Below, piece after piece: positions 7,751 through 21,587 of a DNA stretch of 64,000 nt. Position 1 is the first letter of the stretch; each line of letters begins with the position of its first letter. Under the pieces are notes generated by a model that searched no databases, was not told the DNA's origin, and saw only the letters and a program-made list of their open reading frames with translations. The DNA is from Octopus sinensis (taxonomy: Eukaryota). Where the stretch lies: assembly GCF_006345805.1 (NCBI RefSeq), contig NC_043011.1:16876464-16940463 (forward strand), read 5' to 3'. The position numbers were made by a program, and so were the translations under genes.

Positions 7751-7915
7751 TATTACAAGGATGTTGGGTGAAAATTAACATTCATATTTGCGAGTTAACT
7801 TTGGCATTCTTTCATCGACCTTTCACAAATCATAGTGCCACATAAAAGGCACTGGTACTGCTGCCACATACAAAGCACTTGTGCTGATGCCTTATAAAAA
7901 ACGCTGGGGATGGTT
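7751..7915 (+). repeat. Left arm of the 165-bp inverted repeat bracketing the satellite
   Basis: Ungapped match to the reverse complement of 21423-21587 with 13 mismatches; the inner half carries degenerate satellite monomers. Confidence 0.95.
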
Positions 7916-8009
7916 CCACATGAAGAACACTGTTGTTAGTGTCGCATAAAAAGTGCTGGTGCCATATAAAAAGCACTGGTGCTAGATCAACATAAAAAAT
8001 ACTAGTGCA

Positions 8010-11000
8010 GGTTCCACATAAAAAGCATTGGGACAGGTGCCACATAAAAGTACTGATGAAGGTTACACATAAAAAGCATTGGGACAGGTGCCACATAAAA
8101 GCACTGATGAAGGTTCCACATAAAAAGCATTGGGACAGGTGCCACATAAAAAGCACTGATGAAGGTTACACATAAAAAGCATTGGGACAGGTGCCACATA
8201 AAAAGCACTGATGAAGGTTACACATAAAAAGCATTGGGACAGGTGCCACATAAAAAGCACTGATGAAGGTTACACATAAAAAGCATTGGGACAGTGACAC
8301 ATAAAAAGCATTGGGACAGGTTCCACATAAAAAGCACTGATGAAGGTTACACATAAAAAGCATTGGGACAGGTGCCACATAAAAAGCACTGATGAAGGTT
8401 ACACATAAAAAGCATTGGGACAGAGACACATAAAAAGCATTGGGACAGGTTCCACATAAAAAGCACTGATGAAGGTTACACATAAAAAGCATTGGGACAG
8501 GTGCCACATAAAAAGCACTGATGAAGGTTACACATAAAAAGCATTGGGACAGTGACACATAAAAAGCACTGATGAAGGTTCCACATAAAAAGCATTGGGA
8601 CAGGTGCCACATAAAAAGCACTGATGAAGGTTCCACATAAAAAGCATTGGGACAGGTGCCACATAAAAAGCACTGATGAAGGTTACACATAAAAAGCATT
8701 GGGACAGTGACACATAAAAAGCACTGATGAAGGTTCCACATAAAAAGCATTGGGACAGGTGCCACATAAAAAGCACTGATGAAGGTTCCACATAAAAAGC
8801 ATTGGGACAGGTGCCACATAAAAAGCACTGATGAAGGTTACACATAAAAAGCATTGGGACAGAGACACATAAAAAGCATTGGGACAGGTGCCACATAAAA
8901 AGCACTGATGAAGGTTACACATAAAAAGCATTGGGACAGGTGCCACATAAAAGCACTGATGAAGGTTACACATAAAAAGCATTGGGACAGGTGTCACATA
9001 AAAGCACTGGTGAAGGTTCCACATAAAAAGCATTGGACAGGTGCCACATAAAAAGCACTGATGAAGGTTACACATAAAAAGCATTGGCAGTGACACATAA
9101 AAAGCATTGGGACAGGTGCCACATAAAAGCACTGATGAAGTTCCACATAAAAAGCATTGGGACAGGTGCCACATAAAAGCACTGATGAAGGTTACACATA
9201 AAAAGCATTGGGACAGGTGTCACATAAAAAGCACTGATGAAGGTTACACATAAAAAGCATTGGGACAGGTGCCACATAAAAAGCACTGATGAAGGTTACA
9301 CATAAAAAGCATTGGGACAGTGACACATAAAAAGCATTGGGACAGGTGCCACATAAAAAGCACTGATGAAGGTTCCACATAAAAAGCATTGGGACAGGTG
9401 CCACATAAAAGCACTGATGAAGGTTACACATAAAAAGCATTGGGACAGGTGTCACATAAAAAGCATTGGGACAGGTGCCACATAAAAAGCACTGATGAAG
9501 GTTACACATAAAAAGCATTGGGACAGTGACACATAAAAAGCATTGGGACAGGTGCCACATAAAAAGCACTGATGAAGGTTCCACATAAAAAGCATTGGGA
9601 CAGGTGCCACATAAAAGCACTGATGAAGGTTACACATAAAAAGCATTGGGACAGGTGTCACATAAAAAGCACTGATGAAGGTTCCACATAAAAAGCATTG
9701 GGACAGGTGCCACATAAAAAGCACTGATGAAGGTTACACATAAAAAGCATTGGGACAGTGACACATAAAAAGCATTGGGACAGGTGCCACATAAAAAGCA
9801 CTGATGAAGGTTCCACATAAAAAGCATTGGGACAGGTGCCACATAAAAGCACTGATGAAGGTTACACATAAAAAAGCATTGGGACAGGTGTCACATAAAA
9901 AGCACTGATGAAGGTTACACATAAAAGCATTGGGACAGTGACACATAAAAGCATTGGGACAGGTGCCACATAAAAAGCACTGATGAAGGTTACACATAAA
10001 AAGCATTGGGACAGGTGCCACATAAAAGCACTGATGAAGGTTACACATAAAAAGCATTGGGACAGGTGCCACATAAAAAGCACTGATGAAGATTACACAT
10101 AAAAAGCATTGGGACAGGTGCCACATAAAAGCACTGATGAAGGTTACACATAAAAAGCATTGGACAGGTGTCACATAAAAAGCACTGATGAAGGTTACAC
10201 ATAAAAAGCATTGGGACAGGTGCCACATAAAAAGCACTGATGAAGGTTCCACATAAAAAGCATTGGGACAGGTGCCACATAAAAAGCACTGATGAAGGTT
10301 ACACATAAAAAGCATTGGGACAGTGACACATAAAAAGCATTGGGACAGGTGCCACATAAAAAGCACTGATGAAGGTTACACATAAAAAGCATTGGGACAG
10401 GTGCCACATAAAAGCACTGATGAAGGTTCCACATAAAAAGCATTGGGACAGGTGTCACATAAAAAGCACTGATGAAGGTTACACATAAAAAGCATTGGGA
10501 CAGGTGCCACATAAAAAGCACTGATGAAGGTTCCACATAAAAAGCATTGGGACAGGTGCCACATAAAAAGCACTGATGAAGGTTCCACATAAAAAGCATT
10601 GGGACAGGTGCCACATAAAAAGCACTGATGAAGGTTACACATAAAAAGCATTGGGACAGTGACACATAAAAAGCACTGATGAAGGTTACACATAAAAAGC
10701 ATTGGGACAGTGACACATAAAAAGCACTGTGAAGGTTCCACATAAAAGCATTGGGACAGGTGCCACATAAAAAGCACTGATGAAGGTTCCACATAAAAAG
10801 CATTGGGACAGGTGCCACATAAAAAGCACTGATGAAGGTTACACATAAAAAAGCATTGGGACAGTGACACATAAAAGCACTGATGAAGGTTACACATAAA
10901 AAGCATTGGGACAGGTGCCACATAAAAAGCACTGATGAAGGTTCCACATAAAAGCATTGGGACAGGTGCCACATAAAAAGCACTGATGAAGGTTACACAT

Positions 11001-20000: not shown

Positions 20001-21245
20001 GTGACACATAAAAAGCACTGGTGAAGGTTCCACATAAAAAGCATTGGGACAGGTGCCACATAAATGGCACTGGTGAAGGTTCCACATAAAAAGCATTGGG
20101 ACAGTGACACATAAAAAGCACTGGTGAAGGTTCCACATAAAAAGCATTGGGACAGTGACACATAAAAAGCACTGATGAAGGTTCCACATAAAAAGCATTG
20201 GGACAGGTGCCACATAAAAAGCACTGGTGAAGGTTCCACATAAAAAGCATTGGGACAGGTGCCACATAAAAAGCACTGGTGAAGGTTCCACATAAAAAGC
20301 ATTGGGACAGGTGCCACATAAATGGCACTGGTGAAGGTTCCACATAAAAAGCATTGGGACAGGTGCCACATAAAAAGCACTGATGAAGGTTCCACATAAA
20401 AAGCATTGGGACAGGTGCCACATAAAAAGCACTGGTGAAGGTTCCACATAAAAAGCATTGGGACAGGTGCCACATAAATGGCACTGGTGAAGGTTCCACA
20501 TAAAAAGCATTGGGACAGTGACACATAAAAAGCACTGGTGAAGGTTCCACATAAAAAGCATTGGGACAGTGACACATAAATGGCACTGGTGAAGGTTCCA
20601 CATAAAAAGCATTGGGACAGTGACACATAAAAAGCACTGGTGAAGGTTCCACATAAAAAGCATTGGGACAGGTGCCACATAAATGGCACTGGTGAAGGTT
20701 CCACATAAAAAGCATTGGGACAGTGACACATAAAAAGCACTGATGAAGGTTCCACATAAAATGAACTGATGAAGGTTCCACATAAAAAGCATTGGGACAG
20801 GTGCCACATAAATGGCACTGGTGAAGGTTCCACATAAAAAGCATTGGGACAGTGACACATAAAAAGCACTGGTGAAGGTTCCACATAAAAAGCATTGGGA
20901 CAGTGACACATAAAAAGCACTGATGAAGGTTCCACATAAAATGAACTGATGAAGGTTCCACATAAAAAGCATTGGGACAGGTGCCACATAAATGGCACTG
21001 GTGAAGGTTCCACATAAAAAGCATTGGGACAGTGACACATAAAAAGCACTGGTGAAGGTTCCACATAAAAAGCATTGGGACAGGTGCCACATAAATGGCA
21101 CTGGTGAAGGTTCCACATAAAAAGCATTGGGACAGTGACACATAAAAAGCACTGGTGAAGGTTCCACATAAAAAGCATTGGGACAGGTGCCACATAAATG
21201 GCACTGGTGAAGGTTCCACATAAAAAGCATTGGGACAGTGACATA
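8010..21245. repeat. ~13.2-kb satellite of alternating 25-26-bp monomers (51/52-bp dimer)
   Basis: Monomer X is CACATAAAAAGCACTG(A/G)TGAAGGTT(C/A). Monomer Y is CACATAAAAAGCATTGGGACAGGTGC (26 bp) or ...GGGACAGTGA (25 bp). Degenerate monomers grade out to ~7835 and ~21335. Confidence 0.98.
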
Positions 21246-21422
21246 TAAAATGCACTGGTGCTGGTTCTGCATAAAATGTACTGGTGTTGGTTTCCCATAA
21301 AACTCTCTGATGCTGGTGCTACATAAAAACACTCATAAAGAACACAATGCATCTCATAAAGAGCACAATGAGGTGGAGAGACATATGATCTGGGAGTAAT
21401 TGAATAAAGGTGATACAAGAAT

Positions 21423-21587
21423 AACCATCACCAGTGTTTTTTATAAGGCATCAGCACCAGTGCTTTTTATGTGGTACCAATACCAGTGCCTTTTATGTGG
21501 CACTGTGATTTGTGAAAGGTTGATGAAGGAATGCCAAAGTTAACTAGCAATTATGAATGTTAATTTTCACCCAGCATCCTTGTAATA
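21423..21587 (-). repeat. Right arm of the 165-bp inverted repeat bracketing the satellite
   Basis: Reverse complement of 7751-7915, about 92% identical. Confidence 0.95.

What the first reader, a model, noticed from the sequence alone, without database searches (positions are those of the whole stretch)
7751..21587. 13-kb satellite enclosed by 165-bp inverted repeats that contain the satellite's own monomer (foldback-like 'satellite cassette')
Seen: 7751-7915 is the ungapped reverse complement of 21423-21587 (13 mismatches). The outer ~85 bp of each arm is non-repetitive. The inner ~80 bp is three decayed monomers (CACATAAAAGGCACTGGT..., CACATA.AAAGCACT.GT..., CTTATAAAAAAC.CTGG). On the left these run straight into the homogeneous array. 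One possible end definition is TA|CAAGGATG...CATCCTTG|TA (7756-21582), which would fit a TA target duplication. Known: foldback-type transposons and some MITEs carry subrepeats in their TIRs and can seed satellites. Inference: either (a) a 13.8-kb TIR element whose subterminal repeat ran away into a satellite and could move it as a unit, or (b) two inward-facing copies of a dispersed repeat, with only the left one's internal minisatellite expanded. The arms are more diverged from each other than neighbouring array units are, so the expansion postdates them.
Basis: partly seen in the sequence, partly recalled or inferred. Interest (0 to 1): 0.8.

Follow-up and report, generated by a model that had tools for sequence, protein, structure and literature searches.

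The report
Satellite array with inverted boundary patch
The inverted repeats around this 13.4-kb satellite are real, but the right one sits in a small 219-bp insertion that looks like a DNA-repair scar copied from nearby sequence, so the array is most likely an ordinary satellite, not a mobile cassette.

Summary
7747-7915 is the ungapped reverse complement of 21423-21591 (169 nt, 14 mismatches). It encloses a 13.4-kb array of about 520 monomers of 25-26 bp. Each arm is 89 nt of unique sequence plus three old-type monomers.

The foldback or TIR-cassette reading is not supported.
- There is no target-site duplication at the true ends of the repeat. The proposed TA lies inside the repeat and is trivial.
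- The right arm is part of a 219-bp insertion (21371-21589). Removing it restores four tandem copies of a 21-bp unit that follows the array, so related sequence lies on both sides of that arm.
- The insertion is composite: 9 nt of filler, then a 47-mer that is the inverted copy of 28886-28932, then the inverted copy of the array's left junction. The two copies overlap by 4 nt (AACC), and the outer junction overlaps by 2 nt (CA).

This pattern fits a multi-template, microhomology-mediated templated insertion (inferred). No other copy of the arm occurs in the window.

Separately, the monomer matches 25 of 30 positions of a tandem-prone motif in a dispersed SINE-like family in the window. That family is a likely source of the monomer.

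The source genome could not be searched, so a dispersed-element origin of the arms is still possible.

The parts
7747..7835 (+). Outer, non-repetitive 89 nt of the left arm. It is the unique left flank of the array.
   Evidence: Inverted repeat. Not monomer-derived. No other copy in the window.
7836..7915 (+). Three old-type 26-bp monomers (GCACTGGTRCTG form) that make up the inner part of the left arm. They are in phase with the array.
7916..8014 (+). Four further decayed monomers forming the left edge of the array.
8015..14646 (+). Array domain 1. Dimers pair a B-type monomer (..GCATTGGGACAGGTGC) with an A-type monomer ending ..CTGATGAAGGTTA/C.
14647..21241 (+). Array domain 2. Dimers pair a B-type monomer (mostly ..GGGACAGTGA) with an A-type monomer ..CTGGTGAAGGTTC. 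This domain is more homogeneous: 233 of 261 monomers are identical to a type.
21242..21331 (+). Right edge of the array: three decayed old-type monomers and a 12-nt stump.
21332..21370 (+). 21-bp unit U1 (CTCATAAAGAACACAATGCAT) and the first 18 nt of U2.
21371..21379 (.). 9 nt of filler (AGGTGGAGA) at the inner junction of the insertion. No template was found for it.
21380..21426 (-). 47-mer, the inverted copy of 28886-28932 (45 of 47 identical). Its last 4 nt (AACC) overlap the arm.
   Evidence: E = 5.6e-16. No extension of the match.
21423..21591 (-). Right arm, the inverted copy of 7747-7915.
21590..21629 (+). The last 3 nt of U2 (CAT), then U3 (16 nt) and U4 (21 nt, 20 of 21 identical to U1). 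This is the continuation of the 21-bp repeat outside the arm.
28886..28932 (+). Second copy of the 47-mer, embedded in otherwise unique sequence. It is the presumed template.
41737..42230 (+). One copy of the SINE-like family whose internal tandem-prone motif is homologous to the satellite monomer. It holds a 63-bp unit repeated 3.2 times at 41922-42122. Other copies are at 23217-23450, 35924-36239 and 63383-63659.

Best explanation
This is an ordinary non-coding satellite array. It has 25-26-bp monomers organised as 51-52-bp dimers and roughly 103-bp higher-order units, two homogenised domains, and older monomers at both edges. It is followed on the right by a short 21-bp repeat.

The apparent terminal inverted repeats arose when a break or stalled fork in the second 21-bp unit was repaired by copying two nearby templates in inverted orientation. 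The first template was 47 nt from 28886-28932. After a switch at the 4-nt microhomology AACC, the second template was 169 nt of the array's own left junction (89 nt of unique flank plus the first three monomers). Synthesis then returned to the original template at a 2-nt microhomology, CA. In both copies the + strand served as template, so a single wandering 3' end is enough to explain them. The core of the array was homogenised, and probably expanded, later.

Shown: the repeat, the composite 219-bp insertion, the restored 21-bp repeat, the overlaps, and the absence of a TSD.
Inferred: the template-switch mechanism, the direction of copying, and the timing.

The monomer itself probably descends from the tandem-prone module of a SINE-like family that is common in this window.
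For: -: removing 21371-21589 gives a TRF array of period 21 with 4.0 copies (score 104). The actual sequence lacks this array.
- U2 is split after 18 nt, and the missing CAT follows the insertion.
- 21326-21353 matches 21602-21630 at 93%, E = 2e-6.
- the 47-mer 21380-21426 is the reverse complement of 28886-28932 (E = 5.6e-16). The similarity stops exactly at the junction with the arm.
- the arm (from 21423) and the 47-mer (to 21426) overlap by AACC. Searches show the CA overlap at 21590-21591.
- there is no TSD and no flank similarity beyond the repeat.
- the window has no third copy of the arm, although true dispersed families have 4-12 copies there.
- the left-arm monomers are in 26-nt phase with the array, so the left arm is native to the array and the right arm is the copy.
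- PMC8421209: templated insertions linked to MMBIR are inverted copies of nearby templates. They can use several templates and have 2-12 nt of junction microhomology.
- Monomer origin: 25 of 30 identity to the SINE-like motif. Score 35 against shuffles (mean 13, maximum 23) and controls of 12-18. The 14-mer occurs only in that family.
Against: - The templates now lie 13.5 kb and 7.3 kb from the insertion. This is far more than the 100 bp or less used to define such events in PMC8421209. It fits only if the array and some interspersed repeats expanded or inserted later.
- Nine nt at the inner junction have no template.
- Microhomologies of 2-4 nt are weak evidence on their own.
- The source genome could not be searched, so a low-copy dispersed element carrying outer part + monomers + 47-mer is not excluded.
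- The direction of copying of the 47-mer is unknown.
Confidence: 0.5

Rival explanations
1. Two copies of a low-copy dispersed element X, made of the outer 89 nt, three monomers, the 47-mer and a few more nt. The right copy is a complete 219-bp insertion of X into the 21-bp repeat. The left copy is the one whose internal monomers expanded into the satellite. The 47-mer at 28.9 kb is a fragment of a third copy.
For: The right insertion has sharp boundaries and removes no target bases. The 47-mer exists elsewhere in the window. Both arms have the same outer end. MITE and foldback elements with subterminal repeats that seed satellites are known: Tetris (PMC4079207) and Xmix/Xstir (PMC9659126).
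Against: There is no TSD. The 219-bp unit has no terminal inverted repeats and no poly(A). There are no further copies of the arm in 50 kb of non-array sequence. The 28.9-kb fragment ends exactly where the monomers would begin and has no diverged arm next to it. Finally, an independent insertion next to the very array that a sister copy seeded would be a coincidence.
Confidence: 0.25
2. A 13.8-kb foldback or TIR element (7747-21591, Tetris-like) whose subterminal repeat expanded, and which can move the satellite as a unit.
For: Both arms share the same architecture, a flanking domain plus tandem subrepeats. This matches the TIR-FD + TIR-220 layout of Tetris.
Against: No TSD of any length from 1 to 14 nt occurs at the ends of the repeat. 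The TA lies inside the repeat. The 21-bp repeat lies on both sides of the right arm and is restored by removing only 219 bp. The left flank holds no such units. No transposase is present and no other copies are in the window.
Confidence: 0.07
3. Some other local rearrangement, such as a fold-back inverted duplication or an inversion combined with a duplication during array turnover, without template switching.
For: Inverted segments at the borders of satellite arrays are common (general knowledge). The repeat has no TSD.
Against: A simple fold-back would give a contiguous inverted copy. It would not give a small patch that sits beside a second patch from 7.3 kb downstream and precisely splits a 21-bp unit.
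Confidence: 0.1
4. An assembly artefact at the end of a collapsed satellite, such as a chimeric or palindromic read.
For: Long satellites are hard to assemble. This cannot be checked without reads.
Against: The arms differ at 14 of 169 positions, spread evenly along their length. Unique filler lies between the array and the right arm. Artefactual palindromes would be nearly identical.
Confidence: 0.05

Closest known systems
Templated insertions linked to microhomology-mediated break-induced replication (MMB-TI; Osia et al. 2021, PMC8421209)
   Same: The inserted DNA is an inverted copy of templates in cis. More than one template was used. Junction microhomology is 2-4 nt. There is no TSD and no loss of target bases.
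   Different: The patches are longer (47 and 169 nt). The templates are now 7.3 and 13.5 kb away, compared with within about 100 bp in that study. One junction carries 9 untemplated nt. The event is old: the copies differ by 4-8%.
Tetris foldback transposon of Drosophila virilis (Dias et al. 2014, PMC4079207)
   Same: The inverted arms consist of an outer unique domain followed by tandem repeats, and those repeats also form kb-sized satellite-like arrays.
   Different: Tetris has TSDs of 8-10 bp, TIRs up to 1.7 kb with repeats expanded within the TIRs, and many genomic copies. Here there is no TSD, the arms are 169 nt, expansion is on one side only, the right arm sits inside a 219-bp composite insertion, and no other copies were seen.
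MITE-borne satellites (Xmix/Xstir and miDNA4 in Xenopus; listed in PMC9659126)
   Same: A tandem array lies between inverted repeats that share sequence with the repeat unit.
   Different: Those are multi-copy MITEs with defined TIRs and TSDs. Neither feature could be shown here.
Satellites derived from internal repeats of SINEs or non-autonomous elements (Hy/Pol III, Xenopus satellite 1, CgHINE central repeats; PMC9659126)
   Same: The monomer is homologous to a tandem-prone internal module of a dispersed SINE-like family present in the same window.
   Different: Only the 26-30-nt motif is shared. The flanks of the array are not homologous to the body of that family.

Membership tests
Foldback / Tetris-like TIR transposon | Long terminal inverted repeats with an outer unique domain and subterminal tandem repeats in both arms | tested here: met
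   The arms are 169 nt: 89 nt unique plus three 26-bp monomers, 92% identical.
Foldback / Tetris-like TIR transposon | Target-site duplication flanking the ends (8-10 bp in Tetris) | tested here: not met
   No direct repeat longer than 1 nt occurs at the ends of the repeat (7747/21591). The only matches are TA/AT dinucleotides inside the repeat.
Foldback / Tetris-like TIR transposon | The element is a discrete insertion: sequence outside the ends is unrelated to sequence inside | tested here: not met
   21-bp units lie on both sides of the right arm. Removing 219 bp restores 4.0 tandem copies.
Foldback / Tetris-like TIR transposon | Multiple genomic copies sharing the same termini | not testable with these tools
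   The source genome is not in any searchable collection: 0 hits in metagenome contigs, genome contigs and viral contigs, and the protein route was empty. Within the window there is no third copy.
Tc1/mariner-type MITE | TA target-site duplication next to the TIR ends | tested here: inconclusive
   TA is present at 7754-7755 and 21583-21584, but the inverted repeat continues 9 nt further out with 8 of 9 matching. The TA is therefore part of the repeat and carries no information.
Templated insertion by template switching (MMBIR-type) | The inserted sequence is an inverted copy of one or more templates in cis | tested here: met
   47-mer = reverse complement of 28886-28932. Arm = reverse complement of 7747-7915.
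Templated insertion by template switching (MMBIR-type) | Microhomology at the switch junctions | tested here: met
   AACC (4 nt) between the two patches, CA (2 nt) at the return junction, and 9 nt of untemplated filler at the first junction.
Templated insertion by template switching (MMBIR-type) | Template close to the insertion site (100 bp or less in PMC8421209) | tested here: not met
   The present distances are 13.5 kb and 7.3 kb. They could have been much shorter before the array expanded, but this cannot be shown here.
Satellite DNA with higher-order structure | Head-to-tail monomers, higher-order periodicity, a homogenised core and diverged edges | tested here: met
   TRF periods 26, 51 and 103. 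Seven monomer types account for 413 of 515 monomers. There are two domains and old-type monomers at both edges.
TE-derived satellite (SINE-like module) | Monomer homologous to an internal repeat of a dispersed element | tested here: met
   25 of 30 identity. Score 35 against a shuffle maximum of 23 and control families at 12-18. The 14-mer is restricted to that family.
TE-derived satellite (SINE-like module) | Array flanked by the remaining body of the parent element | tested here: not met
   The array flanks show no significant similarity to the body or tail of the family. The one high score involves low-complexity sequence.

The most novel reading that the evidence does not exclude
The arm (outer 89 nt plus three monomers, perhaps with the 47-mer) is the end of a so-far undescribed low-copy non-autonomous element without a TSD. 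This element would carry the seed of a satellite and insert preferentially into or next to its own satellite. The locus would then record both the birth of a 13-kb satellite from a mobile element and self-targeted reinsertion.
Probability: 0.15. Interest if true: 0.6.

Novelty: new member of a known kind. Interest (0 to 1): 0.3.

Why it matters
The case shows that a satellite flanked by inverted repeats need not be a mobile cassette. Here the second arm is best read as a repair scar that copied the array's own border.

If that is right, the scar is a dated marker for the array's history. It captured the left junction as it was about 8% divergence ago, when the junction already held three old-type monomers.

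The link between the monomer and a tandem-prone module of a SINE-like family adds one more example of satellites that grow out of dispersed elements.

On a practical level, the minus strand of the array is open for up to 2413 codons and could be mis-annotated as a gene.

Tried and rejected
External searches that found nothing useful:
- DNA scans for the arm and the monomer. Metagenome contigs, genome contigs and the arm in viral contigs gave 0 hits. The 19-mer monomer pattern gave two single matches in viral contigs, probably by chance; they were not inspected.
- The protein route through spurious satellite ORFs and a TE-like ORF gave no homologues and no encoding contig.
- Full-text search for the monomer or SINE sequences in papers gave nothing.
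- Pfam on ten window ORFs gave no family above its cut-off. The only row listed (HR_lesion) is below threshold.

In-window tests that were negative or weak:
- Extension of the inverted repeat into the outer flanks is not significant.
- Extension of the 47-mer match in either direction is not significant.
- No source was found for the 9-nt filler.
- The outer arm is not made of decayed monomers.
- Derivation of the 21-bp unit from the monomer is only weakly supported: 11 of 500 shuffles reach the score, plus a 12-nt intermediate.
- Dyad symmetry or hairpin potential of the monomers is no better than in shuffles, z = +1.0 to +1.4.
- A 13-nt TSD reading (CATCTCATAAAGA) of the right insertion was rejected. 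GCACAATG inside it is clearly part of a 21-bp unit, and there is no poly(A).
- Helitron-type ends were rejected. The insertion lies between G and C, with no TC...CTRR.
- Homology of the array flanks to the body of the SINE-like family was not found.

The third homology search was not spent on naming the organism. The guess that this is a cephalopod genome rests on my memory of the SINE sequences only.
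Full report
**What is there.** The window is eukaryotic and rich in repeats. It holds many microsatellites, an interstitial TTAGGG run and several SINE-like families with 4-12 copies each. 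From memory of the SINE sequences I think it is a cephalopod genome. No tool confirmed this.

TRF finds one large array at 7835-21285, with periods 26 (523.8 copies), 51 (258.7 copies, 92% matches) and 103. Cutting the array at the CATAAA anchor gives about 520 monomers of 25-26 bp. Seven sequence types account for 413 of the 515 core monomers. B-type monomers (..GCATTGGGACAGGTGC or ..CAGTGA) alternate with A-type monomers (..GCACTGRTGAAGGTTM). There are two domains, 8015-14646 and 14647-21241. Both edges carry older, diverged monomers of the form GCACTGGTGCTG: 7839-8014 on the left and 21242-21331 on the right.

**The observation.** 7747-7915 is the ungapped reverse complement of 21423-21591. 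That is 169 nt with 14 mismatches and BLAST E = 4.7e-62. Each arm has 89 nt of sequence that is not monomer-derived, followed by three old-type monomers. The three monomers of the right arm are the only ones on the minus strand in the whole window.

**Test of the ends.** The proposed end, TA|CAAGGATG...CATCCTTG|TA, lies 9 nt inside the repeat, and 8 of those 9 outer nt still pair. I tested every symmetric end definition from -6 to +13 nt around the true ends. The only direct repeats longer than 1 nt are TA or AT, all inside the repeat, where a self-complementary dinucleotide must match. Beyond 7747 and 21591 the flanks show no similarity. There is no evidence for a TSD.

**The right arm sits in a small composite insertion.** After the last decayed monomers, the array is followed by a 21-bp unit, CTCATAAAGAACACAATGCAT. 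U1 lies at 21332-21352. U2 starts at 21353 and breaks off after 18 nt, at 21370. Directly after the right arm the sequence continues with CAT, the missing 3 nt of U2. Then come U3 (16 nt) and U4 (21 nt, 20 of 21 identical to U1). BLAST links 21326-21353 to 21602-21630 at E = 2e-6. Joining 21370 to 21590 gives a TRF array of period 21 with 4.0 copies and score 104, which the actual sequence lacks. So 21371-21589 (219 bp) is an insertion into a pre-existing short repeat, with no gain or loss of target bases.

The insertion has three pieces:
- 9 nt with no detectable source (AGGTGGAGA).
- A 47-mer (21380-21426) that is the reverse complement of 28886-28932. It is 45 of 47 identical, E = 5.6e-16, and the match does not extend in either direction.
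- The arm.

The 47-mer and the arm overlap by AACC (21423-21426). Either source could have supplied those four bases. The outer end of the arm overlaps the resumed 21-bp unit by CA.

**Interpretation.** An element that moved as one 13.8-kb unit should have unrelated DNA outside its ends. Here the same repeat lies inside and outside the right arm, and nothing like it lies outside the left arm. The left-arm monomers are in 26-nt phase with the rest of the array, so the left arm is the native border and the right arm is the copy.

The insertion consists of two patches, both inverted relative to sources on the same chromosome segment. Both can be read off the + strand as template, and they are joined at microhomology without a TSD. 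This is the signature described for multi-template insertions made by microhomology-mediated template switching (PMC8421209). I take this as the most likely mechanism, with confidence about 0.5.

The weak points are these:
- The present template distances are 13.5 and 7.3 kb, which fits only if the array and some interspersed repeats grew later.
- The 9-nt filler has no template.
- I could not search the source genome.

All collection scans and the protein-based routes came back empty. The monomer scan of viral contigs gave only two single matches, probably by chance.

**Main rival.** The main rival is a low-copy dispersed element consisting of outer part, monomers and 47-mer, with confidence about 0.25. 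It would explain the sharp ends and the extra 47-mer. It needs three things the data do not favour: a TSD-less element of no known class, a coincidental insertion next to its sister's satellite, and a third copy truncated exactly at the start of the monomers. The unit-moving foldback reading is the least likely (about 0.07). It fails two defining features of Tetris-like elements (PMC4079207): a TSD and a discrete insertion site.

**Origin of the monomer.** The reverse complement of the old-type monomer, GTGCTTTTTATGTGGAACCAGCACCAGTGC, matches 25 of 30 positions of a motif, GTGCTTTTTATGTGCCACCGGCACAGGTGC. This motif belongs to a SINE-like family headed by (ATC)n, with copies at 23217-23450, 35924-36239, 41737-42230 and 63383-63659. 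The local score is 35, against shuffles with mean 13 and maximum 23. Four unrelated repeat families score 12-18. Outside the array and the arm, the 14-mer GTGCTTTTTATGTG (up to 1 mismatch) occurs only in these copies. In the 41.7-kb copy the motif heads a 63-bp unit repeated 3.2 times. The first 26 nt of that unit, up to an internal GGTGC that recurs at the start of the next unit, equal one monomer length. The satellite therefore probably descends from this tandem-prone module (inferred). The array flanks are not homologous to the rest of that family, so the array is not simply an expanded copy in place.

**Function.** Nothing suggests a function. The array is non-coding. Its long minus-strand ORFs, up to 2413 codons, arise because the reverse strand of the unit has no stop codon in any frame, and they have no homologues. 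The monomers fold no better than shuffled sequence.

**Verdict.** The foldback-cassette interpretation is not supported, and option (b) is partly right. The locus is a new example of known kinds: a TE-related satellite with a templated-insertion scar at its border. It is of modest interest unless a genome search shows that the arm is a mobile family.

Noticed in passing
window 23217-23450, 35924-36239, 41737-42230, 63383-63659: A SINE-like family headed by (ATC)n. Its internal motif GTGCTTTTTATGTGCCACCGGCACAGGTGC matches 25 of 30 positions of the reverse complement of the satellite monomer. In the 41.7-kb copy the motif heads a 63-bp unit repeated 3.2 times (41922-42122).
   Followed up: yes
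window 14177-21418 (minus strand) and other ORFs across 7830-21418: The reverse strand of the satellite has no stop codon in any frame of the 51-nt unit. This gives spurious ORFs of up to 2413 codons that a gene caller could mistake for a repeat protein. No homologue and no encoding contig were found.
   Followed up: partly
window 5097-5263 and 6448-6614: A 167-bp direct repeat, 100% identical, with copies 1.35 kb apart. This is far more similar than any other repeat pair in the window. It could be a recent duplication, terminal repeats of a small element, or an assembly artefact.
   Followed up: no
window 4877-4926 vs 5318-5367; family copies 5303-5739, 35268-35697, 49864-50284: A 50-nt inverted repeat (96%) that belongs to a roughly 430-bp dispersed family (88-89% identity between copies). 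It is a candidate MITE and could serve as an in-genome comparison for real TIR elements.
   Followed up: no
window 49143-49510, 51313-51678, 57973-58605, 60425-60796, 61794-62163; single copy at 21870-22069: A 184-bp SINE-like unit that usually occurs as a head-to-tail dimer or trimer (83-92% identity between units). It is another dispersed element that tends to form tandems.
   Followed up: no
window 35369-35398: An interstitial telomere-like run, (TTAGGG)x5.
   Followed up: no
window 7792, 7817, 7903 (left arm) vs the right arm: Three of the 14 differences between the arms are CpG in the left arm against CpT or CpA in the right arm. Two of these (7817, 7903) are CpG-to-CpA transitions. This fits methylation-driven decay of the right copy.
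   Followed up: no
window 4335-4622; 24061-24458; 45528-46018: Very long microsatellites: (GAT)n of about 96 units and (TA)n of 200-250 units.
   Followed up: no
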